The notes under the pieces are model-generated. The model did not search any database, was not told where the DNA came from, and saw only the letters and a program-made list of their open reading frames with translations. The translations under genes were made by a program, and so were the position numbers. A stretch of DNA of 64,000 nucleotides, taken from Convolutriloba macropyga. Its lineage: Eukaryota. The stretch lies in contig NC_134477.1 in NCBI RefSeq assembly GCF_964194025.1, forward strand, positions 46,190,001 through 46,254,000. Direction: 5' to 3'. Positions 3,656 to 45,530 of the stretch are shown here, piece by piece (positions within the stretch are counted from its first letter, which is position 1; each line of letters starts with the position of its first letter).

Positions 3656-4283
3656 TGGAAACTTTTTATATCTATTGGGACAAATTTTGGAGGTATAAAA
3701 CTGTAATTCGTCAAAAATGCCCAGGCTTTGCTGGAAGCGCCAAATAAATGACAAAAACTATGCAGTAATATCAGTTAATGAGGTAAAAATTTTTCAACAA
3801 GAGGCTAAATGCGCTGAAAAGAAAAAAGTAGCTTTTAAGCGTTTATCTCGCATAACTAAACGCTCAATATAGCGTTGACTTAAGAGAAAATTTTTGCTAA
3901 AATTTTTGAGTAATTTGGCAATAGTTGTACATAGTTAAGCGCTTAATTTAGCGTTGAATTACTCCATTTGTCCGCCTTAGAAGTGCACTCAGTAGTATGA
4001 TTCATAAAGAAAACAATTTCATTGAAAGCTAAGGTTGAGTGACAACGTATTGGGTTTCAACCATCAGGACAAAAATGTAAGTTGACAGTTTTTCTGACAT
4101 AATTGTTGAATAATACTTAAGCTCTGTATTCTCTGGCAATTATATTATTAAACGATAGTTCCTTATCTTACATTTTTTTCATAATGCTACCTGGGTAACC
4201 ATTTCTGTAGATGAAATTTTTGCGAAGGTAAGATGATGAAAGTTTTGCTCGAAAGTATTTTGGTCCATAAGAAGACTATTCAC

Positions 4284-4876
4284 CTGGAAAGTGTTGGTAT
4301 TAACAATATCAATCGGCCGATCACCCACATGATACCAAGTTGCAATGTATCCAAAGTTAGCATCAAATTTTGGATCTTGTAGCTTGAATATTACAGTTGA
4401 CAAGTCATTATCCGACATCCGTCGATATGAGACCTCGGCACCATCAATATCTCGTTTCTGTCGCGTACCCGAGACAAATTTGTTCTGAATCAAAGCCGGC
4501 GCAATTATGTACTCTCTCAAGTCGAAAAAATCTGAGGGAGTGATTGAAATTGCAGACGCATTTTTGCAATCAAGCACAACATAGCCATCGTTGCATATAC
4601 AAACTTTATTAAATTGAATGTCGAATAATTTAACGTTGTTGCTCAGCTGGACAGGATCCGAACATATGCCATCAGTGAGTGGATTCAAACTATTACCAGC
4701 GTCATCACCAATCGGAAAATCAGCGCAGAAACTGTCCGGGTTAAGAGGTATGATTGGGTCACGTGATCCCCTTTGGTCCAATTCAAACAACCAGGTTCTA
4801 GTGTAATCGTTATTATTTGTTGTCGGCAAATGTGTCACATTCTCTGTTCCAGATCCCTTCACTTCCCACAGTGTTA
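4284..4876 (-). CDS. NIDO-like protein paralogue A, exon 2 (593 nt)
   Basis: Acceptor TTTTTTTAG| at 4877-4878 and donor CAG|GTGAAT at 4283. Translation includes IIAP...YRR...YIATWYHV...NTFQ, typical of NIDO domains. Same length and boundaries as the paralogous exon 37801-38393. Confidence 0.85.
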
Positions 4877-6019
4877 CTAAAAAAATAAGATTTCAATCAA
4901 ACAAACAGAAATAGAAGCTCTCTAAAACTCTCTCGTGTAAAATCACACGATTTCTTTCGTGTGATCAAAATTCATGCAATTTTTCGTGCGGAAAAAGCGT
5001 CTTGTGTAATTTCACATGAAAAAATCTTCCACGTATGATGAAAAATTACATGAACACTTACTCTGCTTTAAGTGTTGAAATATCATTCCATTTGAAATGT
5101 CATTCCAAGTGCAACAAAATCTAAATCTCACAAAATACAAAGCAATCAGTATGCCTGCCCATAACAATTCAAATATCACACTACAAAACGACATTCGACA
5201 AACAATCCAACCACCCCAATCTGCAACAGAACTATTCTTGAAATTTTTCAGGTGGACAGCGAATGATCAGACACCGGAAAACATTTTTAATTGATGGAAC
5301 GGAGGCCCATCTCCTCTATAAAACCGACGATTTAGATGACATCAAGAAAGTAAATGTGAAAGATATAACAAAAAAATAAGCGCAATGGGAATTAAGGGAC
5401 TAGATAATTGGTGCTGCAAACTACAAAACAAACAGTTCAAAGTAACAATCTAAAACTTATATGATTGCTCACAATTTTAAAGAAAAGAGCAGAAAGAAAA
5501 CAACGCAACCGGGTTGTTGATAAACAGCTTCACATGACATAATTGCAATAATTATGACAACTTTTCAGCCCGTTAGACCGTAACACTGAGTGTTATTTGA
5601 CTACTGCTCACCTGCAGAAGAACACTGACTGCAGCCTAACTAGTTTCAAAAAGACGTAAGTTGTAATTTATCAAACTTTTATTTTAAATAGCATTAATAA
5701 TTGAGTAGAAATATTAAGAAACGGTATTTACTGCTCTTCCGAATCAGTCAAAAACTTAGCTTTGCTTTTTTTGTTTGAAAACGTCAGCGCAATAATAACA
5801 GCGTCAAATCCATTATGCAATCTAACTTTTAAGTAATGAATTTGTTTAGAAAAACTAAATATTCACAGACGCATCTTACTTGAGTCTGTAACACAAATTT
5901 TTAATCTGAATTTTATTAGACATCTTCAACTATCTTTAATCCTGTTATCTACCATTTTTCTCCAATTACTTCAATGAAATAAATCAGTTATATTATTGTT
6001 CAACCCTTCCGTTTTTTTT

Positions 6020-7849: not shown

Positions 7850-8375
7850 TGTCTGGTCCGTTCATTCCAAAGCGCATGTATTGTCCATTATCAACTATTT
7901 GGGTAAGGCTGGCGATATCGAACTCAAACAAGCACCTCTTCACGCCCATACCATCAGTGCCACAAGATATGAAAATTTGCCTGTTCCCACTGGTAAAATC
8001 CCACACAGCTCCGATCTCGAACCCGTAATTGTAACAAGGTATCGCATCTCTAAAGTAATTTGGATTGTCAATTGTTTTCAGTACAGCTGATTTGCTGTCA
8101 TCCGAATCAAACAGAGCAGCCGCAATAACTGTGGTTGGAGGGTCCAGCAAATCATTTGGGTTCTTCAAATTGGCAGATTGCCCGGCGACTGTTATGTAGC
8201 CATCGTGGCACAGGTAGATTGAAGTTACAGTCGTGGTTCCCACTTTGAACGATTCCGGTAACACGTAAGGTTCCGAAGCACATCCTTGAGCGTTTGTTAC
8301 AGTCGCTACAATTGCGTCGTCCGCAAATGCAGTAGCGATGACCAATGCACTGAAGGCCAGCTTTAGAAAATTCAT
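7850..8375 (-). CDS. NIDO-like protein paralogue A, exon 1 (signal peptide plus first NIDO-like domain)
   Basis: MNFLKLAFSALVIATAFA|DD is a signal-peptide-like start. Homologous to 44407-44947. Phase-1 donor A|GTTAGA sits at the same position as A|GTAAGT in the paralogue and is in phase with the exon at 4876. Exons 3-4 were not found in 1-4283 and presumably lie left of the window. Confidence 0.8.
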
Positions 8376-32700: not shown

Positions 32701-33535
32701 CTTAAAAAACATACCAGGACAAGTCCTGGCGTACAATTCAAAGAATTTTCATTGACTAAACAAAAAATTAGACTAGAACGGACTATGATTGAACTGGAAA
32801 ATCAGATCAAAGTTAAAAAAAAAACAGAAAATCAATTTCAAAATGCCGCATGTGAACAAAAAACCACCCGCGAGAAGTGGAAATTTGGTTCAAACTAAAA
32901 AGTAGACCCAAAATGAACTATGAAGAGGCTGGGAAAACTATTTAGAAAAAAAATCCGATCCAAAAAATCGAAAAACAGTAAATATCACAGTGAAATTGCC
33001 ACACGTGAACAAAAAACCACTAGCGAGAAAGCGAATTTTTTTCTCACTCTATTTTAAAATTAGAGCGAAAAAATTACCGACGCAAAACCACTCGCTTTTT
33101 CGCTCCACTTCCTGTTTCGGTGCGACCAAAATCACTACTCCAATTTGACTTCACAAGTCTTGAAAATAAGTGAACAGATCTCAAAAAATAACAGCGCCCG
33201 AACACAATTCAAATTATTTCAATTGTAAAAAAGTAGCGCACCAATAAAATTCAAATTCTTTGAATTGTAAAAAAGGACAGTGCCTAAATAATAGTCGTTT
33301 GAGAGGCTGACGGCGGCTGTTAAAAAACCATTCACCTAGCAAACAGCAAAATCAAAGTGTTCATAAATTTACAACTGCAGCTCTATTCAATAAATAAGAT
33401 CAGATAATGACCGCATAATCCATTCGATACTTTTATTCTGATTCTTACATGTAAATATCATCATAATTAATTATTATTAATCTTTACAGCGCATTTATGC
33501 AATTTGTACAGGTGGGCTGCCGCATCACACAATTT

Positions 33536-33768
33536 TTATCCCAATTTAATCATAACCACACCAATTATGGAAAGGAAGCAAGAGATCATCTGTGGTCTCA
33601 TTTCTTCGACACCCGACGTGAACTTGTTACGGTCAAATCTGGCCACAGCTTCTACGTCATCACTCAGATGTTCTCGCAAATCCAACAGGAATATTCCAGT
33701 GTTTCCAGTCAAGTAGAGACTGATGTTTTCAGGCGGTATATTCTCAGGGATCAAGGTGTAATCGATTT
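33536..33768 (-). CDS. NIDO-like protein paralogue B, terminal exon 4 (end of domain 2 plus hydrophobic GPI-like tail)
   Basis: Acceptor TGTTTCAG| (33769-33770), phase 1, matching the exon 3 donor. Encodes IDYTLIP...LTGNTGIFLLDL...MISCFLSIIGVVMIKLG*. AATAAA on the minus strand at 33432-33437. Confidence 0.75.
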
Positions 33769-34295
33769 CTGAAACAGTTTTAATTATACACAATTAACTT
33801 TACGTGTGACCCATTAGTTTGATTTTCTCAGAAGCATTTTTTTTCTGAAAATCAATTATTGCTTTATAACTATACAAAATAATTATCTTTGAGATAAGAA
33901 AACAATGTTAACATTAACAACTGTAAAGCAATTCTCATTGTGTGTGATGCGCTAAAACCATTATTTAGGAATTTGCGTAATTTTTTGATAACGTAGAGTT
34001 TTCTACAGCAGCTATACATCAGTAGCAAGGATAAATGTTACAAATCTGAAAAGCATCAACTTAAAACTGCCACGGTAGTTACAAGCAACTAATGTACCTA
34101 TATAAACGTATTTTCAAAGAAAATTGTTGCAACTTACCGATCAATTAAGATAATTTAAGGTAAATAAGTGTAGTCAAATTTTGCAATGTATCAATCGGCA
34201 AAAGGGAGAAATCAGCTACAAGAGTTAGGAATTTATTCAATAAGTTGGTAAAAGGTACCGGAGGACGTTTTTAGCGTGAGAATTTGATTGCTTAC

Positions 34296-34434
34296 TGTTT
34301 CCCGGTCCATTTATACCAGCAATGAGTTGTTCACCAGCTACAGTTTGAGTGTATCCCATTTCGAAGTAGTAAATTATGGCCACACAACGCTGTCTGTCAG
34401 TGCCATCATAGCCATTGTCACATACAACACTCAA
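34296..34434 (-). CDS. NIDO-like protein paralogue B, exon 3 (139 nt)
   Basis: TTTTAG| phase-0 acceptor and A|GTAAGC donor. LSVVCDNGYDG...VAIIYY...LIAGINGPGN continues NTFQ as expected for NIDO (NTFQ-VL...DG..FAIFLY...AGFN). Confidence 0.85.
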
Positions 34435-34522
34435 CTAAAATCATAGCCCGTGAAAAAACATGCTTTATCTTGCCAAGATCTTGCATGTTCCATGTCGAGA
34501 AAATATCAATATATGAACGAAA

Positions 34523-34959
34523 GGATCTTTTCAACAATCGCCCCCTTTTGTACCTAGTAGAGAATCTCCCCCTTCTCTGCTATACTTTTTACGACAATAT
34601 TACTCGGCCTACGGTAATGTAGCCGAATATGGGTTTGAGCGCAACTGCGTACCGCTGTTCACGGCCATGCTTCTCATGCGCTGTGGGATGTAATCCGGAA
34701 ATCGCCGGTCAGTTATCGCGGCAAAGCTACGACGCGCGTGAAGCGCCGCCACCAACCCACCAGTCGGAAATTCAATTCGCTTTGTATTCCAATTCGTTTA
34801 ATTGGCATAGCATGGCGTCTTTTATTCTATTCGGTATAACATAGTATGCGCATACGTGGAAAGTTATTAGTTGTCTCTGTTTGGTTAATGAATTGCGCGC
34901 TTAAATTCCATTCAAAAATAGCCCCCCTTTTGCAAAAGGGGCCATTGTTGAAAAGATCC
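34523..34959. mobile_element. MITE / non-autonomous DNA transposon, 437 bp, in intron
   Basis: About 27-bp terminal inverted repeats: GGATCTTTTCAACAATCGCCCCCTTTTG and CAAAAGGGGCCATTGTTGAAAAGATCC. Interior is GC-richer than the flanks. TSD unclear (AAA on both sides). Confidence 0.85.
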
Positions 34960-37800
34960 AAACAAACTGTAAGATCTCCCCATGGGTATGAAAAAAACTG
35001 GATCTCGGCACCATACACAAGAAATTTTACCTTTCTGAGTTGTAGACATTAATTTTCTTTTGCCAAGATTTAACAAGATTTTGGCACCATGAACTTTTCC
35101 TAAAATATCTTACCAAAATCTAACCAAAGTGTTCCGAGTAGTAATGTCCTATCAAAATAAAAAGTCCGAGAGATCAAAAGTTCAACAGAACGATGATCAA
35201 AAAGTTTCAGTTTTCTTTTGTCTCTTTCATACTCTATGTAAAAAAATAATTGTCGATTCATAGGTTTAATAAAACTGTTTTCTGTTTTGGAATTATGGCA
35301 AAACTATTTTTTTAGAATCTGGCCAAGATTTAACTAAGGCGTTCCGAGCATTTTTGCCCTATCAAGATCTTGGCAAAAGATTTCAATTTTTTGCCAGATT
35401 TATAATGATCTGGTATGAAATGACAAGGCATATCAAGTTTTGATTCTCTGACTAACTGAAGGGTTTTTGTCGAGCTTAATTCCAGAGTTTTTGTGTGAGT
35501 CATAGTAATAATTGAGATGCACGCTGTTTTTGCTCTCATTCTCCTGATATTTAATTTACCATTTGATAGCGATTTACCCTGTCCCTTTTGACACCAAAAT
35601 CAAGCAAAGTTAAACAAAGGAGCTTTATAGTGTGGCATGGTAAGCCATCGTTTCCACGGTAAGTGACTCAGCTTGCTACTTGGTAGAAACAATCATTTTC
35701 ACTCTAATAACTCCAGATGTTAAAAAATGTGTTGATCATAGAGGAAATGGAAATCTGTCCCTTAAGATGCTGAAATCATATAATTTTCGATTGAACGACT
35801 GCAGCAGCCAAAATGACACTTTTTGCATGTCAGTTTTGTATACGTCAGAAACATCTGCAACAAAAACTTTTCGAACTGATGGCTGCATTGAAAACATAGA
35901 ATATGACAGGAAAATAGAAAGATTTAGTAGTTCCATTTGTTTTTCGGTTTGCGTGCTCCAGTGTGTCTGTTTTACATTACCATGGAAGAAGTTTGAGGTT
36001 CAACTGTTAACTTGAATGCAAATTGATTGCAAAAATTTTATACTCTTCGTGTTTGCATAGAATAATAAATTTGAGCAGCATGAGACTGTTTCCTTAGTTT
36101 CTAAAATCCACATTTTTGATCCCTTTGATCTGACAACGTGAGTTTTTATCATAAATAGCTATTTCAATGTGCACTTATAGTTTATTATACCTATTTCCTT
36201 GTGGATTGCGATCTAACTTTGCCAGCTTTTGGATTTATTTGCCAGAATAAATGATTTACTTTTTTCTACTCACTGTGCTCTTCAGACCTTTCACTGGACG
36301 TTACATGAACCGTGAAGGGTTAATTGCTGAAGTTTTCAGCGAATTTCATAAATTGTTCACTAGATCAGGGTGCCAAATAATTCGTTATTGACTGCCACTT
36401 CTTTAATAACCGGCAATCAATTTTTACAATTCAGCTAATCGGCAATTAACACTCCTATTGAATTTACTTCACTGATCTCCTATTCTCTTATTGGTTCCAT
36501 TTTCAAGTTAGTTCGTAGTTTTTTCTGTTGGGTCAAACTCTAATCTTCAAAGTTTAAGATGCAACTTGTTTGGCTTTAAAAAATTAAGGAATGAGATGTC
36601 AAGTAATAAGATGAACTTCCTTCCAAAAAAATGGGTGGGTGGGTTCTTCGCAATACAGATTTTAATGCAATTTTTTCATTGATGTCGAGTTTCTATGGAA
36701 GGAATATTTACGGCCGAGCCTTAAATCTTGTCTTTAAGGCGATAATGTCCCAAAAAAAATCTCACTGCTGCTGCCGCAAGATGCCCCTTTCATCAAAAAA
36801 GAGAAATACAAGGAGAACGAAGAAAAAACAATGTTCATGCGGTTAAGTCCGGTTAAGTCAGTGAAAGTAGATTAATAAATGGAACAAAATAACGAAACTC
36901 CGATATTTTCCGTTGTTTTATCGGTAAATTTCAACTCTTGGTTTCTTTCTTCCAAAGCTACTGTTAAAAAACATAGGTCGTTTTATTGGAGCAAATTTAA
37001 AAAATCTTTTTTTTTTGAACTTCCAAATATTTCACAACAAAAATTGTTTAAATTAGGTTTCGGTGAGAAAACGGTGTTTGGACAAAAATTCGTTTTCTCG
37101 CTTGTGGTTCTTTGTTCAAATGCGACATTTTGATACTGATTTTTACTATTTTTCAATTTTTCTATTTGATTGTTTTCTAAATGGCGTTCCCAATCCATGC
37201 ATAGTCCATTCTGGTTCGTTTTCTTAATTAATCAGTGAAAATCGTGTCAAGTTTGTTTAACTTCAGCTTTACCTTAAGTCACAGCTTGTTCAAAAGTTTG
37301 ACTTCTCTAGTCTAGATTCATTCTCTGCTCAAAGTGTTTTTAAACAGCAGTTGGTTGCTCAGAAAAGCAATCTAAAGTGAACAGAATCAGTACCAGAAAA
37401 CGAAATCAAAATGATCTCAAATTCTACAGTTTTTTTCTGCAATTTTCGGCAGGATTTTTTTAAATGGTTTTTTTAATGCACTCAGAGTCCTTGTCCTAGT
37501 CCTTGTCCTTGCTTCCGGATTTGTCCTGCTATGTTTTTACGTTTAGAACGAGAATTTTGAAAAGTCACATCATTAACACCCATGTGCAAACATATTTAAC
37601 ATCACATATCATCACGTCATTGCTATGGAAATTAACCTCTCTCTTACATCTTTTTGGTTGAATTTTTGAGGGGTCAATATTCTAATACTCGCTAAGTAAA
37701 CGCCATTACCTGCGGCTCAATATCTGCTTGAACTGATTTTTCGGGTTTACCTTTTGAATAAGTTCTCCCTCATATCCTGTCCCTTATAAAATTTACTCAC

Positions 37801-38393
37801 CTGAAAAGTGTTAGTGTTAACAATATCATTCGGCCGATCACCCACATGATACCAAGTCGCAATGTATCCAAAATCAGCATCAAACTTCGGATCTTGGAGC
37901 TTGAATATTACAGTTGACAAGTCATTATCCGACATCCGTCGATATGAGACCTCGGCACCATCAATATCTCGTTTCTGTCGCGTACCCGAGACAAATTTGT
38001 TCTGAATCAAAGCCGGCGCAATTATGTACTCTCTCAAGTCAAAGAAATCTGAGGGAGTGATTGAAATTGCAGATGCATTTTTGCAATCAAGCACAACATA
38101 GCCATCGTTGCATATACAAACTTTATTAAATTGAATGTCGAATATTTTAATGTTGTTGCTGAGCTGGACAGGATCCGAGCATATGCCATCAGTGAGCTGA
38201 TTCAAACTATTGCCAGCATCATCACCAATCGGAAATTCAGCGCAGAAACTGCCCGGGTTAAGAGGCATGATTGGGTCACGTGATCCCCTTTGGTCCAATT
38301 CAAACAACCAGGTTCTAGTGTAATTGTTATTGTCTGTAGTTGCCAAAAGTGAGACATTTGCTGTTCCCGATCCTTCCATTTCCCAAAGAGTAA
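37801..38393 (-). CDS. NIDO-like protein paralogue B, exon 2 (593 nt)
   Basis: TTTTTAG| acceptor and CAG|GTGAGT donor. Highly similar to 4284-4876. Contains RQKR and YIATWYHV...NTFQ. Confidence 0.88.
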
Positions 38394-39599
38394 CTAAAAA
38401 ATTATATATAATCAACTACATTTTGGATAGAAAGTCTAGATCTTCTTGCAGTTGGTTAATTTCGATTTACAACACACAATTCTTTCAAAACACTTTTTGA
38501 ATATTTGTTAAGAACTTAAAATGGAATTTTTTGTTACCAAGAACTTTGTGATGGAACTTTCACACGATACAAGAGGCTGGGTTATGTGTTTAGGAGTATT
38601 GCATACTTTCCTTAATTTTAAATCCAAATGGAAAAAAAATAGAAAAAAAAGGATAGCAGATAAATTGCAAGAGAAACAATACAAAAACAAAAATATTACA
38701 AAGTTATTGACGTGTAAGAACAGGCAAGTCTATGCCAAAACGAACATGTTCCTGCAATACAATCAATTAAGATATATAGCAGTTAGTCACTTGACTCGGA
38801 AGAAACTTACAAGTCAACATTTTGGTCAACAAGAGGCACACACAAAAATCATTTGACTCAAAGTACTAACAAATTTGTAATTTATCATGAGTTAGCTTTC
38901 TACTTTAAAGGAAAGTACGCAAGATATCTTTAGAACAATGTCGCCTTTTGAAAACAAAACCAAAGAGGCAATGCTCCACGTAAAAGATTTTGCTTTTGCA
39001 AAACCGCCAACTATCGACTTTTGCAGAATAAACAAAAAGCTGGAAGCGCACGATATCGTAAAAACATCTCAAGAACATCACTGATTACATACTCTTAGCG
39101 CTAAAAACAGAGTTCTAGCGGGTGTTGTCGGCAAAACATATTGTAATTTAGAAAATTTGAATTGACAATTAACTTGGTAAACATAACTATGTGCATCGAT
39201 ATAACAGATCAACAGTTTAATTAATCATCTTTCATCAGTCCATTTCAATTCTCCGCAAAAGAACTTTTGTTTTTAGTCTCCCCACTTTGGCCAGGAAAGA
39301 TAAAAAGCTTGTGTTTGAAAAAATTAAAATATCCTGAGTGGTTTCTCTGGACTGGATCAACTACTGAAGTTCCACCTACTTGATCAGGTAACAACACAAT
39401 GACAAGAACAAGTACTACGTTATTTCAGATGCCTTAGAAGAATTTTTCTTTCCTTTGGTGAGCTTGGAAATTCTCTCAAAATCAGCAAAGACTTTAATGG
39501 CGCCCGGGCTCGCAACATTACCGCAGACCCATAAATTACATTTACTGAGAAAAACCTTGACAACCTGTCGGGAGCAATAGAAAACACTTCCAATAGATA

Positions 39600-39870
39600 A
39601 CTTCTGCTGCCTGAAACTGTGGCTATCCTTTCCAAAGTTTTTTAGAAGATTGAAAACAAACCATTTACTAAGAATTACACAGCCAGTAGCACAAATAGTT
39701 GACTGCCTTGACTTCTTAGCCCTATTTCAATGACGTTCAAAGAACTCAGCACAACACCAGGAGCAGCCGTACGGCTCAATATCTTTGATGGCAGAAAAAT
39801 GTCTTCTGGTAAAGAAAAGCTTTGAGTCATAAGGTTTTGTTCTTCCAAAACTGGAGGCAATTTAGCCATT
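39600..39870 (+). mobile_element. Possible very decayed non-LTR (LINE) RT fragment
   Basis: Translations VAILSKVF*KI and KALSHKVL resemble LINE RT motifs (LSKVFEKI; KAFDSVSH.IL). Weak. Confidence 0.25.
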
Positions 39871-40524
39871 GAAAACGGTGTTACGATTCGGTCTCAATTT
39901 CTATCATGTGTTGCAATTGAGTGCTCCAAGTCCGTGATACACAACAGCATGGTCACTTAATGCATCCAGAGTTCTGTAAAAGCAATATAGGCATATTCTC
40001 TTAAAGTCTTAATTTGTTTTCTGCAAGTCTGTGCTTTACGCTTATCCCAAATTAATTGTTGGACAAAAAGAGACCTGAAGCAGGTACAGGAAATGCAGAT
40101 ACTCGTGCGCTGGATTGTGGAAGTGACAGCAACGAAAGTCTAGCATTCTCTATCACTGAATTTTGGTCATCTTTCGAGTCTGCAAACTTCTGAAGATCTA
40201 TAACCTCAATTTTTTTGTTTCATAATAGCAGACAAAATGAATCAAAAGTCTCATAGGGAGCTGCAAAACCAGGTTCCTCTTTGTTAGACAGACCTGAGAT
40301 TTTTGTAACCAAAGCACTTGATGCTGTGAGGGATCCCACGTAACAAGCTTGATGTTTCTGTTGAGGTTGTTTGATCCCTTAATAAGACAGTTTTCAGGAA
40401 GACATGCGTGCTGCCATGTGATATAGGAAAAAACTGTTCCAAGATATTAATCTAAAGTCTCTGTTTGAAAATTGTCGAAAATTTTCTTCAACACATCTTA
40501 TTCAATTGTTGGTGTTTTTTAAGG

Positions 40525-43500
40525 GAGAGAAAACAAATTTTGCAGAACTCAGAGTGATGTCAAATAATACCCACTGACTTTTATATTGTAGAAGTAGCTC
40601 AATTTTTCAAGTATTTCTGAAGATCTTTAAAATCGTTTTTCTCAAACATGAAACATCGTTTTAGTTGCTTCATATTGCAGCCACAATACACTCAAAAACA
40701 TGGCTCAAACCCAGTTGCACTTCCCATTCTAAAAATGGCTCATCGGTTTCCGAAAAACTTCACATTCGTCTTTTCTTAAAAAGAGACCTCTTTCAGGCCA
40801 TCCTTTCAGGAGGATTTGTGAAGGTTGGTTAAGTTGGTCTCACACTACGGCAACTCCGTCATGTAACTTTCAGTTCTCTTTTGTGAGTTCGGTGTGCTGT
40901 GCAATGGAACCCACCCCGCACCCCGCTCGTCTTTTTTGGAGTGCAAGGTGGCACCTAAGAAATTTCCTCTGTAGTCTGCGTTTACAAATTGTTTTTTTAA
41001 ATTCAACGCTGAGTCCGATTGATATAGGGCTGCGCATTGAACTCAGTGTCGTTAAACACTCAAAAATCGTTTTGCTGCGTCAAGCAGCAGTCTGTCTGTT
41101 GAAAGTGATATGTTTTTTGTAAACGTCTTCATAACTAAAATCAAAAATATTTGACACCAGATTGTTTGGGGATGTAACTGAAGGCAGAATGTTTTTTTTC
41201 TGTCGAGATGCTAGTTTATGCTAGCGGTTTAATTGTGGCTTTATTATCAAAAACGAGTCCATCAGACGCTATAAATTTAGCAGTTTTTTGAATATAAAAT
41301 TAGAGGCACAGCTTTTTTGCTTTTAACCAATTGCTATAAATCACTTTCTTGTTTTCTTTGCGATTATGTCATGGAAGTTGCATTCGACCAAAGACCACAA
41401 AACTCAACGGTGCTCCAGCACCCTAAAAGTTTGGAACTAGATTACGTTTGTTTTTTTCCACCTCTGTTGCTCAATGTAAGAGTAAAAATGCTCTTTGATA
41501 CTGAAAACAATTTTTGAGAATTTCAGGTGAACATCTGGACTCTAAACGCAGTCATTTTACTATAAGTGAAAAAATGCGATCACCTCTTTTGCAACTCTTC
41601 AGGGATACAGCAACAAGGCTGCACATATGTGCTCAATTTTTTCATTCTGCACCCCCGAAAAAGTTGGTCATTCTATCTTAAAATGAACGATGAAAACATC
41701 AGATTTCACTGAGAGCTCATCAATTTGAGCTGAATTTGCTTGAAATGTTTTTCTAAGTGCTCCTGGGTTGCTTAAAATTGGAGTACGCCCAAACTTGCAT
41801 CAACTTAACCCAATAGACCTTATCTGAGCCCCATGACAGTGTATAAAATTCTGATATTTTCCTAAAATTTATAAGCACCCGCATTGTATAAAACTCTGCT
41901 TGGGAAAATTGTATTGTGCTTGGTATTATGTGATAACGATTATCGATGCTCACCACAGTTTCCTTTAAAAAACTGCAAATTGCTTGCATTGGTAATGTGC
42001 TCACTTTTTGAGTAGCTGTGATCGCCTGTTTACGTTGCCTTTAGATAGTATTTTGGGTTTTCCATCTGTTGAGTAGATCTCAAAAAAGTAATTTGATAAC
42101 CTGGGATGATGAGGATAAGTAAAGAGTGATACAACTAGTTGTATATTGTTTTCGTTTCATCGTTACCGTTTTACGGCTCCACCCCAAAATTTTCGAAAAA
42201 AGATATGATTTATGGGGTCCTATGAGTTGTAAATTAAAATTTCTCAGTAATTTGTGTAATTGATTTAGTTAAATGCTGTATAGTTTGTCTTCGTAGCTTT
42301 TTGTGTTCTTTGTATGTCTCTTTGAGAGGAAACAACTTTTGCAGTATTCAGAGCGATGTCAAACAATATCCATTGACTTTTATATTGTAGAAGTAGCTCA
42401 ATTTTTCAAGTATTTCTGAAGATCTTTGAATCGTTTTTCTCCAACATGAAACATCGTTTTAGCTGCTTCATATTGCAGCCACAATCAACTCGAAAACATG
42501 ACTCAAACCCAGTTTCACTTCCTTTTCTAAAAATGGCTCATCGGTTTCTGAAAAACTTCACATTCGTCTTTTCTTAAAAAGAGACCTCTTTCAGGCCATC
42601 CTTTCAGGAGGGTTTGTGAAGGTTGGTTAAGTTGGTCTCACACTACGGCAAATCCGTCATGTAACTTCCAGTTCTCTTTTGTGAGTTCGGTGTGCTGTGC
42701 AATGGAGCCCACCCCGCACCCCGCTCGTCTTTTTTGGAATGTAAGGTGGAACCTCAAAACTCAGATAACTGCTCTGCAGTCTGCGTTTACAAATTGCTTT
42801 TTTTAATTTCAACGCTGAGTCCGATTCATCTAGGGCTGCGCATTGAACTGAGTGTCGTTAAACACTCAGAAATCGTTTTGCCGGGTCAAGCAGCAGTCTG
42901 TCTGTTGAAGGATATATGTTCTTTGTAAACGTCTTTATAACTAAAATCAAAAATGTTTGACACCAGATTGTTTGGGGATGTAACTGAAGGCAGAATGTTT
43001 TTTTTCTGTCGAGATGCTAGCGGTTTATTTGTGGCTTTATTATCAAGAACGAGTCCATCAGACGCTAAAATTTTAGCAGTTTTTGAAAATAAAAGTAGAG
43101 GCCCAGCTTTTTTTGCTTTTAACCAACTGCTCTAAATCACTTTCTTGTTTTCTTTGCGATTATGTCATGGAAGTTGCATCCGACCAACGACCACAAAACT
43201 CACCGGTGCACCAGCCCCCTAGAAGTTTGGATCTAGATTACATTTGTTTTTTTCCTCCTCTGTTGCTCAATTTAAGACTAAAAATGCTCTTTGATACTGA
43301 AAATATATATGAGAATTTCAAGTGAACATCTGGACTCTAATCGCAGTCATTTTACTATAACTGAAAAATTGCGACCACCTCTATTGCAACTCTACAGGGA
43401 TACAGTGACAAGTCTGCACATATGTGCTCAATTTTTTTCATTATGTCATTAAAACACTGCAACCCCCGAAAAAGTTGGTCATTCTATTTTTAAATGAACG

Positions 43501-44133
43501 ATGAAAAGATCAGATTCACTGAGAGTTCATCAATTTGAGCTGAATTTGCTTGAAATATTTTTCCGAGTGCTCATGGGTTGCTTAAAATTGGAGTACGTCC
43601 AAACTTGCATCGAATTAACCCAATAGACGTTATCTGAGCCCCATGATCTCAGTCCCATCCAGTGTATCGAATTCTGATATTTTCCTAAAATTTTTAAGCA
43701 CCCGCATTGTATAAAATTCTGTTTGGGAAAATTGTATTGTGCTTGGTATAATGTGATAACGATTATCGATGCTCATCACAGTTTCCTTTAAAAAACTGCA
43801 CATTGCTTGCATTGGTATTGTGCTCACTTTTTGAGTCGCTGTGATCGCCTGTTTCATTTGCCTTTAGATAGTATTTTGGGTTTTCCATCTGTTGAGTAGT
43901 TCTCAAAAAAGCAATCTGATAACCTACGATGATGAGGATAAGTAAAGAGTGATACAACTAGTTGTAAATTGTCTTCGTTTCATCGTTACCGTTTTACGGC
44001 TCCACCCCAAAAGTTTCGAAAAAAGATATGATTTATGGGGTCCTATGAGTTGTAAATTAAAATTTCTCAGTAATTTGTATGATTGATTTAGTTAAATGCT
44101 GTATACATTGACTTCGTAGCTCTTTGTGTTCTT
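40525..44133. repeat. Head-to-tail tandem duplication, unit about 1.8 kb, in intron 1 of paralogue B
   Basis: GACTTTTATATTGTAGAAGTAGCTC at about 40576 and 42375. Both units end CTTCGTAGCT..TTGTGTTCTT (42310/44133). Confidence 0.93.
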
Positions 44134-44406
44134 CTAGAAAAGAGTAACATGCAATGACGAATCGGATAGTTTTCACAAGACAGGAAATCATTTTGTTTTC
44201 ATCGCCCTGTGTGAACAAGTCACCCTGCGTGTTTTGCGCTAATATTGGTTTGCTGAGTCTATTAAGAAGAGAACTAGCCCAGAAGTTTGATACCGAATTT
44301 TATCAATGAGATGGGTTCATAACATTACTGAGACTAAAAAATATATCAGAAAATTGTATTCGCCAATACAACAGGTGAAAATCAAAACAATTCAATTTAG
44401 ACTTAC

Positions 44407-44947
44407 TTTCTGGTCCGTTTATTCCGAAGCGCATGTACTGTCCATCATCGGCAATTTGACCTAAGCTGTCGACGTCAACCTCAAACAAACACCTCTTCAC
44501 GCCCATGTCATCAGTGCCACAGGCTACGAACACTCCTCTCTTCCCGTTGTCAAAATCCCACAGCGCTCCGATCTCGAATTCGTACGTGAAGCAAGGTACA
44601 GCACTAGCGAAGTAATTTGTGTTGTCGAAAGTTTTCAAAAAAGCGGAACCAGTATCATTTGAACCAATCAGACCACCCGCAATAACCGTGGTTGGAGGAT
44701 CCAGCAAATCATCTGGCTTCTCCAAATTGGCAGATTGCCCGGCGACTGTTATGTAGCCATTGTGACACAAGTAGATTGAAGTTACAGTCGTGGTTCCCAC
44801 TTTGAACGATTCCGGTAACACGTAAGGTTCCGAAGCACATCCCTGAGCATTGGTTACGTTTGCAACAATTGCATCGTCTGCAATTACAAAAGTAACTAAC
44901 AGTGAGCTCAGGGCCAACTTTAAAGAGACAATCATTGTCATTTTCAT
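44407..44947 (-). CDS. NIDO-like protein paralogue B, exon 1 (signal peptide plus first NIDO-like domain)
   Basis: MKMTMIVSLKLALSSLLVTFVIA|DD. SEPYVLPESFKVG...SIYLCHNGYITV resembles the N-terminal part of NIDO modules. Canonical phase-1 donor A|GTAAGT at 44406. The true start could be any of three ATGs. Confidence 0.85.
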
Positions 44948-45530
44948 TTGACTGAGCGTTAAAATTTATAACTTTTTTATAACTAAGCACAAAAAATGCA
45001 TATGGTCCAATTAAGAACGTTTGTGGTCTCAAAGTTGAATAATAAGAAGCCTTTCGTAAATAGCTTCTGCTCTTATTTTGATTATTTTTGTTTATCAGTT
45101 GACCAAAATTTAAGAAAAAAATAACTTTTTGTTATGCAAATATTTAATCAATACTATTAAGTGTCTCATTATGTTTATTATTTATTTAGCAAAATTGCAA
45201 TTTTATGTATCGTTGAGTTTATAAAGAGCTGACTGCTTGAAAATTGCTATTTAGAATGCATAAGACCATTTTTAATTAAACCATTCACACCTGCAGTGTG
45301 GCTTATTAAAGAGCCGTAGAAAAAACAGCCGAAGTAGAATACAGCTAAAAATGTTTGAAAAAAGGTGAGGTCTTTATGCTACACCAAGTTGTTCAGACAT
45401 GTTTTGACTTTTTGGGAAGCATCACAGACTAACATGTATGGCATCAAATAAAAGCTCTACGCCTGCAGAATTTTACTAAAAAGAGTGAATTCAAGAACTT
45501 CTTTTATTTTTTAACAAAGTTTTTGAACAA

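What the first reader, a model, noticed from the sequence alone, without database searches (positions are those of the whole stretch)
33432..44947. Hidden 4-exon gene: double NIDO-like, furin-cleavable, probably GPI-anchored surface protein
Seen: exons 44947-44407, 38393-37801, 34434-34296 and 33768-33536 join in phase (1, 0, 1) through GT-AG sites into 1506 nt (501 aa plus stop), with AATAAA about 100 nt downstream. Two internally related domains both end G(I/M)NGP at a phase-1 intron. RQKR sits inside domain 2, and the C-terminus is hydrophobic with no cytoplasmic tail. Known: NIDO normally occurs once, with other modules (nidogen, alpha-tectorin, MUC4, SNED1). Inference: a NIDO-only tandem architecture may be a lineage-specific adhesion, mucus or recognition family.
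Basis: partly seen in the sequence, partly recalled or inferred. Interest (0 to 1): 0.7.

Follow-up and report, generated by a model that had tools for sequence, protein, structure and literature searches.

The report
Acoel double-NIDO surface protein gene
The four exons are real and form an intact gene of the acoel worm Convolutriloba macropyga for a secreted, probably membrane-tethered protein with two divergent nidogen-type (NIDO) domains; it is one of three tandem copies of a family found so far only in this species, and its function and expression are still untested.

Summary
That covers the four minus-strand exons, GT-AG borders, phases 1/0/1, 1506 nt, RQKR, the hydrophobic C-terminus and AATAAA 98 nt after the stop.

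The window is Convolutriloba macropyga (acoel) chromosome piece C10. The gene is the first of three tandem paralogues, and exons 1-2 of the next copy lie in this window.

**Exon join.** RefSeq models the next copy (XP_075256111.1, 497 aa) with exactly this four-exon structure. All copies keep the splice phases and an Ile codon split across intron 1. Per-exon dN/dS is 0.08-0.67. No further family-like exon lies in the introns.

**Domains.**
- Domain 2 is NIDO: Pfam gives 29.6 bits against a cut-off of 25 on the paralogue.
- Domain 1 is missed by Pfam but is clearly homologous to domain 2 (profile-profile 99.8%, E 1e-27).
- Domain 1 aligns weakly but end to end with canonical NIDO.

**Processing.** An R-x-K/R-R motif sits in the same loop in 7 of 11 paralogous loci; that loop is poorly modelled (pLDDT under 50) in the paralogue B model. 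Convertase genes exist in the genome. GPI anchoring is plausible and untested.

**Limits.** No RNA evidence could be obtained; the only runs served were genomic DNA. Tandem NIDO is not unprecedented: a fish mucin-22-like protein has five. This gene itself was not found among annotated proteins.

Verdict: a modest, lineage-specific architectural variant.

The parts
44407..44947 (-). Exon 1 (CDS start to phase-1 donor): signal peptide plus most of NIDO-like domain 1
   Evidence: Open frame ATG...GINGPE then A|GTAAGT. Paralogues are 73% and 60% identical and use the same phase-1 donor. dN/dS 0.27-0.31. AlphaFold2 model of mature residues 25-180: pLDDT 82.5, all-beta.
44876..44947 (-). Predicted signal peptide (residues 1-24, cleavage after ...VIA)
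   Evidence: Hydrophobic core with Kyte-Doolittle mean 1.9-2.2. Small residues at -3/-1, by inspection. The paralogues keep an equivalent N-terminal hydrophobic leader. No SignalP run was available.
38394..44406 (-). Intron 1 (6013 nt), holding two direct copies of a ~1.6-kb element (40525-42136 and 42324-43959, 90-95% alike, start-to-start spacing ~1.8 kb)
   Evidence: the repeat finder. No family-like coding piece inside (tblastn).
37801..38393 (-). Exon 2: last strands of domain 1 (38393 to about 38287), a linker, then the first two thirds of domain 2 (38223-37801)
   Evidence: ttttttag acceptor and GTGAGT donor. The split codon A+TT is Ile, also Ile (A+TA) in both paralogues. Pfam NIDO positions 27-104, E 2.4e-4. 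dN/dS 0.15-0.16.
37969..37980 (-). RQKR, candidate proprotein-convertase site in a loop inserted in domain 2
   Evidence: CGA CAG AAA CGA. The same loop carries RQKR, RKRR or RHKR in 7 of 11 paralogous loci. The loop is absent from domain 1. pLDDT is below 50 there in the paralogue model.
34435..37800 (-). Intron 2 (phase 0), with two very high-copy repeats (about 34632-35031 and 37032-37431)
   Evidence: Read-contig depth is 1,000- to 2,000-fold above the neighbouring sequence. No family-like coding piece inside.
34296..34434 (-). Exon 3: middle of domain 2, ending GINGPGN at a phase-1 donor
   Evidence: ttttag acceptor and A|GTAAGC donor. 87-89% identical in paralogue B with the same borders. 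dN/dS 0.08-0.10.
33536..33768 (-). Exon 4: last strands of domain 2 (33768-33674), a polar spacer, the hydrophobic tail and the TAA stop
   Evidence: tttcag acceptor. Paralogue B has the same acceptor and phase. dN/dS 0.22-0.67.
33539..33589 (-). C-terminal 17-residue hydrophobic segment (candidate GPI attachment signal, or a membrane anchor)
   Evidence: Kyte-Doolittle mean 2.16 and nothing after it. It is preceded by T-S-G and a 6-7 residue polar spacer, with the same spacing in paralogue B. The equivalent segment of paralogue B is predicted as a helix.
33432..33437 (-). AATAAA polyadenylation signal, 98 nt after the stop
   Evidence: Read directly from the sequence.
7850..8375 (-). Exon 1 of tandem paralogue B (RefSeq XP_075256111.1)
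   Evidence: 100% match to P0007 residues 1-175.
4284..4876 (-). Exon 2 of tandem paralogue B; its exons 3 and 4 lie outside the window, at C10:46182919-46183056 and 46178580-46178789
   Evidence: 92% identical to exon 2 of the finding. 98.5% match to P0007 residues 176-375.

Best explanation
This is an intact protein-coding gene of the acoel Convolutriloba macropyga. It is the first of three tandem paralogues on the minus strand of chromosome piece C10.

**Product.** About 501 residues:
- a cleavable signal peptide;
- NIDO-like domain 1 (exon 1 plus the start of exon 2);
- a short linker;
- NIDO domain 2 (the rest of exon 2, exon 3 and the start of exon 4);
- a roughly 30-residue polar stalk;
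- a 17-residue hydrophobic C-terminus.

**Shown.** The exon structure, its conservation, purifying selection, homology of the two domains to each other, and homology of domain 2 to NIDO.

**Inferred mechanism.**
- The protein enters the secretory pathway and is N-glycosylated; there are six sequons.
- It is displayed on the cell surface, most likely after the C-terminal peptide is exchanged for a GPI anchor at the Ser of T-S-G (about 55%). Otherwise that peptide acts as a tail-less membrane anchor.
- A furin-type convertase cuts the exposed RQKR loop inside domain 2 (about 55%). The predicted strands lie on both sides of the cut and no cysteine pair is expected to bridge it. The two fragments would therefore stay together non-covalently, as in Notch S1 processing, or the N-terminal part could be shed.

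**Likely role.** Extracellular adhesion, a matrix or mucus layer, or ligand (possibly glycan) binding. Longer family members place the same two domains on a Pro/Thr-rich mucin-like stalk.
For: **Sequence.** The exons, borders, phases, stop and AATAAA were read directly.

**Organism.** Identity comes from the RefSeq names of cluster members and the matching assembly size.

**Exon join.**
- Three tandem copies keep exon order and spacing.
- Acceptors, donors and phases are the same, and the split Ile codon across intron 1 is kept in all three copies.
- The RefSeq model of paralogue B (P0007, 497 aa) has exactly this structure.
- Other annotated family proteins run co-linearly through exons 1, 2 and 3.
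- No other family-like exon lies in the introns.
- dN/dS is 0.08-0.67 in every exon.

**Domains.**
- Pfam NIDO scores 29.6 bits against a cut-off of 25 on P0007 residues 318-405. Exon 2 of this gene alone gives E 2.4e-4.
- Domain 1 against domain 2: blastp E 2e-8 over 186 columns; hhalign probability 99.6-99.8%, E 1e-23 to 1e-27.
- Domain 2 against five canonical NIDO repeats: probability 78-94%.
- Domain 1 against the same repeats: E 2.7e-5, co-linear over 168 columns.
- The AlphaFold2 model of P0007 gives both domains the same order of strands and helices.
- The exon 1 model of this gene has pLDDT 82.5.

**Convertase site.**
- The motif sits in the same loop in 7 of 11 paralogous loci that share only 30-37% identity.
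- The loop has pLDDT below 50.
- The P_proprotein domain (PF01483) scores above its cut-off at three loci of the genome.

**Membrane end.** Hydrophobic tail statistics and spacing. Family members P0026 and P0016 have a mucin-like stalk followed by a hydrophobic end.
Against: - There is no transcript evidence. The four runs found were genomic DNA, with contigs running straight through the introns.
- This copy was not found among annotated proteins although both neighbours were.
- Pfam does not detect domain 1. The direct domain 1 to NIDO profile match is weak (probability 6-49%).
- No GPI, signal-peptide or cleavage predictor could be run.
- The candidate omega+2 residue is Val, which is suboptimal. 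The tails of paralogue B and of P0026 contain charged residues.
- Whole-protein analyses used paralogue B (73-92% identical by exon).
- No solved structure resembles the models (best Z 6.2), so the fold gives no functional anchor.
Confidence: 0.72

Rival explanations
1. The copy in the finding is a silent or decaying duplicate, or is spliced differently from the model. Only its neighbours B and C would be working genes.
For: No RNA evidence. Not found among annotated proteins while B and C are in RefSeq. Introns are loaded with repeats and the gene sits between a gypsy and a BEL element.
Against: All four exons are open with consensus splice sites and a poly(A) signal. dN/dS against B is 0.09-0.56, not about 1. 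A second haplotype or assembly carries an intact exon 1 ORF, 93% identical.
Confidence: 0.12
2. The gene is as modelled, but the processing claims are wrong. The C-terminal segment would be a plain transmembrane anchor, or the protein would simply be secreted. RQKR would be an uncleaved surface loop.
For: The omega+2 residue is Val. The tails of paralogue B and P0026 contain Arg, Lys or Glu and look more like a membrane span with a very short tail. Four of 11 paralogous loci lack the basic motif. No predictor or experiment was available.
Against: Paralogues A and B share the same spacing: small residues, a 6-7 residue polar spacer, then a hydrophobic end with nothing after it. The basic motif is kept in a loop that otherwise varies, among paralogues only 30-37% identical. 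That loop has pLDDT below 50 in the paralogue B model. Convertases are present in the genome.
Confidence: 0.3
3. Exon 1 and exons 2-4 belong to two separate genes, so there is no double-NIDO protein.
For: The 6-kb intron could not be spanned by reads. Pfam does not see NIDO in exon 1.
Against: Exon 2 has no start codon or signal peptide of its own, and it begins with the last strands of a domain whose beginning is in exon 1. The phase and the split Ile codon are conserved in three copies. The RefSeq models of B and C, and four more distant family proteins, join these parts.
Confidence: 0.03

Closest known systems
XP_075256111.1 (LOC142348598) and XP_075255321.1 (LOC142348040), 'uncharacterized proteins' of Convolutriloba macropyga: the two tandem paralogues
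   Same: Same exon structure, with signal peptide, two NIDO-like domains and an RQKR loop. Identity to this gene is 73-92% (B) and 60-73% (C) by exon.
   Different: They are separate genes 33 and 67 kb downstream. C's model ends in unrelated sequence after exon 2, and its exons 3-4 were not found on C10. None has a described function.
Alpha-tectorin (TECTA)
   Same: An extracellular protein with an N-terminal NIDO (entactin G1-like) domain. It is GPI-anchored and released by proteolysis (abstract of bioRxiv 10.1101/2024.01.04.574255). This is the nearest described analogue of the proposed way of working.
   Different: TECTA has one NIDO domain followed by vWD and ZP modules (from general knowledge), and its cleavage is not inside NIDO. 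Here there are two NIDO domains, no other module, and the basic site lies inside domain 2.
MUC4, nidogen-1/2, SNED1 and Drosophila Mesh (classic NIDO proteins; from general knowledge of Pfam PF06119 architectures)
   Same: NIDO domain in a secreted or surface glycoprotein. Longer C. macropyga family members also carry a Pro/Thr-rich mucin-like stalk.
   Different: Those proteins have one NIDO domain combined with AMOP, vWD, EGF, sushi or FN3 modules. Here there are only two NIDO domains. The sequences are so divergent that a Pfam scan of the genome does not pick up these three loci.
Mucin-22-like protein of the fish Hoplias malabaricus (XP_066520069.1)
   Same: Tandem NIDO repeats in one protein: five, Pfam E 1e-191.
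   Different: It is 2289 aa with canonical NIDO repeats that have no basic loop. It matches this family only at E 9e-4.

Membership tests
NIDO domain proteins (Pfam PF06119) | Domain 2 matches the Pfam NIDO model above the gathering score | tested here: inconclusive
   For this gene only single exons could be scanned. Exon 2 gives 21.6 bits against a cut-off of 25, E 2.4e-4, model positions 27-104. The full-length RefSeq paralogue B, 92% identical in that exon, gives 29.6 bits and passes. A domain 2 profile against five canonical NIDO repeats gives probability 78-94%, E 2e-5 to 3e-8.
NIDO domain proteins (Pfam PF06119) | Domain 1 is also a NIDO domain | tested here: inconclusive
   Pfam finds nothing. 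Domain 1 is homologous to domain 2: hhalign probability 99.8%, E 1.6e-27. A domain-1-only HMM hits the Pfam-positive NIDO region of P0016 at 4.6e-14. The direct match to canonical NIDO is weak but full-length: E 2.7e-5 with probability 49% in global mode, and E 0.006 with probability 6% in local mode. The order of secondary-structure elements is the same as in domain 2. Membership therefore rests on transitive homology.
NIDO domain proteins (Pfam PF06119) | Extracellular context (signal peptide, sequons, paired cysteines) | tested here: met
   N-terminal hydrophobic leader in all three copies. Six N-x-S/T sequons and 12 cysteines in the ectodomain. This is by inspection only; no SignalP was available.
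GPI-anchored proteins | N-terminal signal peptide, plus a C-terminal hydrophobic 15-20 residues at the very end, preceded by a polar spacer and small omega residues | tested here: met
   The pattern is T-S-G, a 6-7 residue polar spacer, 17 hydrophobic residues (Kyte-Doolittle mean 2.16), then the stop. Paralogue B has the same spacing. Omega+2 would be Val, which is suboptimal.
GPI-anchored proteins | Positive call by a dedicated predictor, or release by PI-PLC | not testable with these tools
   No GPI predictor was on hand, and the spliced product was not assembled.
Proprotein-convertase (furin-type) substrates | R-x-K/R-R motif in an exposed stretch of a secretory protein | tested here: met
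   RQKR at 37980-37969. The loop is an insertion relative to domain 1. It has pLDDT below 50 in the paralogue model. The motif is kept in 7 of 11 paralogous loci. The convertase P-domain is present at three loci of the genome.
Proprotein-convertase (furin-type) substrates | Cleavage demonstrated | not testable with these tools
   Needs expression and an inhibitor or mutant test.

The most novel reading that the evidence does not exclude
The tandem double-NIDO genes belong to a fast-diversifying, highly polymorphic family of convertase-primed, membrane-tethered binding proteins, some on mucin stalks. Acoels are reported to lack the conserved immune signalling pathways. They might use this family at the epidermal or digestive surface to bind microbes, algal symbionts or mucus glycans.

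Hints only:
- The family is confined to this species in 1.84 billion representatives.
- The two available exon 1 sequences of this gene (this assembly and an ENA-sourced ORF) differ at 12 of 180 residues.
- A 'Nidogen-like / mucin-2-like' transcript is abundant and goes down after Vibrio challenge (PMC12849515 Table S5).
- Both domains weakly resemble carbohydrate-binding supersandwich domains (Z up to 6.2).
Probability: 0.1. Interest if true: 0.7.

Novelty: new variant of a known kind. Interest (0 to 1): 0.3.

Why it matters
NIDO is a widespread extracellular domain with no solved structure (none was found in the PDB by sequence or by fold here) and no agreed function. This family offers a compact two-NIDO, single-purpose protein with a conserved internal convertase loop and a membrane tether. 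That makes it a simple system for asking what NIDO binds and how cleavage changes it. For acoel biology it adds a lineage-specific, tandemly expanding family of surface proteins. One related member responds to bacterial challenge, in an animal reported to lack canonical immune signalling. As it stands, this is an annotation-level result: one more, apparently unannotated, member of a family already present in RefSeq as uncharacterised proteins.

Tried and rejected
- **RNA support.** The look-up of sequencing runs returned four runs of unknown kind. Laying them on 33432-39431 showed contigs running through introns 2 and 3, so they are genomic DNA and say nothing on splicing. Intron 1 (6013 nt) cannot fit into one 6000-letter lay in any case.
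- **Pfam on single exons.** Only exon 2 hits, and below the cut-off.
- **PDB by sequence.** Nothing for exon 2 or for a canonical five-NIDO protein.
- **Foldseek against PDB.** Noise only, for both models.
- **VIA-align wide search.** The whole-paralogue model gave Z up to 6.2, with both domains hitting galactose-mutarotase-like supersandwich domains. With the confident exon 1 model alone the best Z was 4.4, and those folds no longer stood out. I keep this as a lead, not a fold assignment.
- **Word search with the full paralogue.** It found only an ENA ORF of this gene's exon 1, so orthologues in other taxa and a RefSeq entry for this copy were not found. Short cluster representatives may hide members.
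- **Extra exons.** None were found in the introns.
- **The bacterial promoter/terminator scan** is irrelevant for an animal gene.
- **Joining the exons.** Every whole-protein step used the natural RefSeq paralogue P0007.
Full report
**1.

I read the four blocks on the minus strand directly.
- Exon 1 (44947-44407) opens with ATG, codes 180 residues and ends with one extra base before GTAAGT.
- Exon 2 (38393-37801) follows ttttttag and ends at ...NTFQ before GTGAGT.
- Exon 3 (34434-34296) follows ttttag and ends ...GINGPGN plus one base before GTAAGC.
- Exon 4 (33768-33536) follows tttcag and ends in TAA.
- AATAAA lies at 33437-33432.

The lengths add to 1506 nt with phases 1, 0, 1. RQKR is at 37980-37969. 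The last 17 residues are hydrophobic (Kyte-Doolittle mean 2.16), and so is the N-terminus.

Whole-protein work used a natural paralogue instead.

**2. Where it is**

The window is G000:C10:46190001-46254000 of a 1,175,981,408-base assembly. Cluster members of the exon 2 hits are RefSeq proteins of Convolutriloba macropyga, an acoel. The published assembly of that species has the same size and scaffold count.

The gene lies between a gypsy element and a BEL element flagged by other first-reader notes. I did not check those notes.

**3. It is one of three tandem copies, and they validate the exon join**

Exon-by-exon searches of the genome found further copies on the same strand.
- **Copy B.** Exon 1 is at window 7851-8366 (73% identical) and exon 2 at window 4284-4874 (92%). 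Exons 3 and 4 lie just outside the window.
- **Copy C.** It lies about 34 kb further on, with exon 1 60% and exon 2 73% identical.

In all copies exon 1 ends one base into a codon with A, and exon 2 starts with TT or TA. The split codon is therefore Ile each time. All other acceptors, donors and phases agree too.

More distant annotated family proteins (P0026, P0025, P0018, P0028) align co-linearly through exon 1, exon 2 and exon 3. Apart from exons 1-2 of the next tandem copy (B), at 7851-8375 and 4278-4877, nothing else in the window matches the family, so the introns hide no extra exon.

Nei-Gojobori dN/dS between copies:

| Exon | dN/dS |
|---|---|
| 1 | 0.27-0.31 |
| 2 | 0.15-0.16 |
| 3 | 0.08-0.10 |
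| 4 | 0.22-0.67 |

All four pieces are therefore under purifying selection in this frame.

**4. No transcript evidence**

The only runs served held 85% of the exon 2 words. Laid on 33432-39431, their contigs run straight through introns 2 and 3 at even depth, so they are genomic DNA. Expression and the junctions of this particular copy remain unshown.

This copy was not found among annotated proteins. The exon 2 search and the search with P0007 returned only B, C and an ENA ORF of this gene's exon 1. Short cluster representatives could hide an entry, so 'unannotated' is likely but not proven.

**5. Domains**

- **Pfam.** It sees NIDO only in domain 2. Exon 2 of this gene gives E 2.4e-4, below the cut-off. 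Full-length paralogue B gives 29.6 bits against 25.
- **Domain 1 against domain 2.** In B the two halves align over 186 columns from the N-terminal DDA to G-x-NGP, at E 2e-8. Profiles built from first domains and from second domains of family members match at probability 99.6-99.8%, E 1e-23 to 1e-27.
- **Against canonical NIDO.** I used the five repeats of a fish mucin-22-like protein as the reference (Pfam E 1e-191). Domain 2 scores probability 78-94%. Domain 1 scores only 6-49% (E 0.006 to 2.7e-5), but the alignment is end to end and matches the landmark motifs in order.
- **Domain-1-only HMM.** It also hits the Pfam-positive NIDO region of P0016 at 4.6e-14.
- **Protein-language atlas.** Its nearest clusters for exon 1 and for P0007 are all NIDO, but at scores that count only as leads.

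So domain 1 is a divergent NIDO by transitive homology.

The intron after GINGP lies inside each domain, at homologous places one codon apart and in the same phase. The final strands are on the following exon. The domains therefore do not end at that motif.

**6. Structure**

The AlphaFold2 model of P0007, with a 16-row alignment, has mean pLDDT 63.7, about 70-80 in both domains. Each domain shows the same succession of strands and short helices. The RQKR loop (308-321) and the C-terminal 46 residues fall below pLDDT 50, and the tail is modelled as a helix.

Mature exon 1 of this gene alone gives pLDDT 82.5 and pTM 0.79, all-beta.

No solved structure matches.
- Foldseek gives noise for both models.
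- In the VIA-align wide search, both domains of P0007 separately hit galactose-mutarotase-like supersandwich domains. These were the N-terminal domains of GH94, GH149, GH65 and GH95 enzymes, aldose epimerases and the YidC periplasmic domain. Z was only up to 6.2, below the tool's stated noise level.
- With the exon 1 model the best Z is 4.4, and those folds no longer stand out.

This is a lead, not an assignment.

**7. The basic loop**

RQKR sits in a 12-residue insertion that domain 1 lacks. I aligned the exon-2-type pieces of 11 loci.
- The same loop reads RQKR in A, B, C and one more locus.
- It reads RKRR in two loci and RHKR in one.
- Four loci have no basic motif.
- The rest of the loop varies, and overall identity between these paralogues is 30-37%.
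- Canonical NIDO repeats have no such motif.
- The convertase P-domain (PF01483) scores above its cut-off at three places in the genome.

Together with the poorly modelled loop, this makes convertase cleavage a reasonable but untested inference. The cysteines lie either all before or all after the site. I therefore expect no disulfide across the cut, and a non-covalent two-chain form or shedding of the N-terminal part.

**8. The C-terminus**

After the last strands of domain 2 comes a polar stretch. It is followed by T-S-G, six or seven polar residues and 17 hydrophobic residues up to the stop. Paralogue B keeps the same spacing, though its tail is less hydrophobic.

Longer family members (P0026 of 777 aa and P0016 of 577 aa) insert a long Pro/Thr/Ala-rich mucin-like repeat before a similar hydrophobic end.

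This pattern fits a GPI signal. A tail-less membrane span is the alternative. No predictor was available.

**9. How wide the family is**

A full HMMER pass of exon 2 over 1.84 billion representatives gave 14 hits at E up to 1e-3 and only six at 1e-10.
- Every named strong hit is C. macropyga.
- The only named outsider is the fish mucin-22-like protein, at E 9e-4.
- Three weaker hits have unrelated repeat architectures (haemolysin-type calcium-binding repeats in an ENA record; FN3 and SdrD-B in JGI/IMG records) and are probably spurious.

Within the genome at least six other genes carry one or two such domains. A Pfam NIDO scan of the genome finds 13 loci but not A, B or C.

The family is therefore divergent and, as far as these libraries show, lineage-restricted. 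Tandem NIDO as such is not new.

**10. Context from papers**

- The genome note reports 3.65% heterozygosity and a deposited alternate haplotype. This may explain the ENA-sourced exon 1 ORF that differs at 12 of 180 residues.
- A study of immune challenge in this species lists a 'Mucin-2-like ... Nidogen-like' transcript with base mean about 2100 and log2 fold change -0.62 after Vibrio exposure (PMC12849515 Table S5). Its sequence is not given, so I cannot say which family member it is.
- Alpha-tectorin is the closest described analogue in way of working. It is a GPI-anchored NIDO protein released by proteolysis.

**11. Verdict**

The 'double NIDO' reading is supported: firmly for domain 2, and by transitive homology for domain 1. 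Furin cleavage and GPI anchoring are plausible inferences strengthened by family-wide conservation.

This is a lineage-specific architectural variant of a known domain family whose sister copies are already in RefSeq as uncharacterised proteins. Interest is modest unless expression and binding data show a role at the host-microbe surface.

Noticed in passing
window 4284-4876 and 7850-8375 (minus strand): Exons 2 and 1 of tandem paralogue B (RefSeq XP_075256111.1). Its intron 1 is about 3 kb. Its exons 3 and 4 lie 11 kb and 15 kb further on, outside the window.
   Followed up: yes
G000:C10:46160361-46164437; L033 and L035; G000:C9:19382582-19384319 (L024, L029): Paralogue C has exons 1-2 only on C10, and the RefSeq model ends in unrelated sequence. 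No exon 3 or 4 lies in the 20 kb downstream, where a 200-N assembly gap sits. An orphan exon 3 + exon 4 pair with intact splice sites lies on another chromosome piece (C9), and its exon 4 is 95% identical in protein to the finding's exon 4. This is either a misplaced piece or a partial duplicate.
   Followed up: partly
window 40525-42136 and 42324-43959: Two direct copies (90-95% alike, start-to-start spacing about 1.8 kb) of an unidentified ~1.6-kb element fill a third of intron 1.
   Followed up: partly
window about 34632-35031 and 37032-37431: Two short stretches of intron 2 have contig depth 1,000- to 2,000-fold above their surroundings in genomic runs, so they are very high-copy repeats.
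   Followed up: no
window 44408-44947 compared with P0011: An ENA ORF from another assembly or haplotype carries this gene's exon 1 with 12 of 180 residues changed. By eye, paralogue B's exon 1 differs from its ENA counterpart (P0008) at fewer positions. This may mean high polymorphism in domain 1.
   Followed up: partly
paralogue model m9579c88b6447, residues 14-227 and 238-455: Both NIDO-like domains weakly resemble galactose-mutarotase-like supersandwich domains of glycoside phosphorylases and hydrolases, aldose epimerases and YidC (Z 4.2-6.2). The similarity did not stand out with the exon 1 model alone.
   Followed up: partly
G000:C8:52241698-52266723 and G000:C8:52515030-52515212: Another family locus has exon-1-like, exon-2-like and exon-3-like pieces. 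Its exon-2-like pieces carry in-frame TGA and TAG stops, so it is probably a pseudogene.
   Followed up: no
window 44964-44981 (minus strand): Two TATA-like motifs lie only 17-34 nt upstream of the first ATG. Transcription may therefore start at or after it, and the second or third Met (residues 3 and 5) may be the true start. The signal peptide is kept either way.
   Followed up: no
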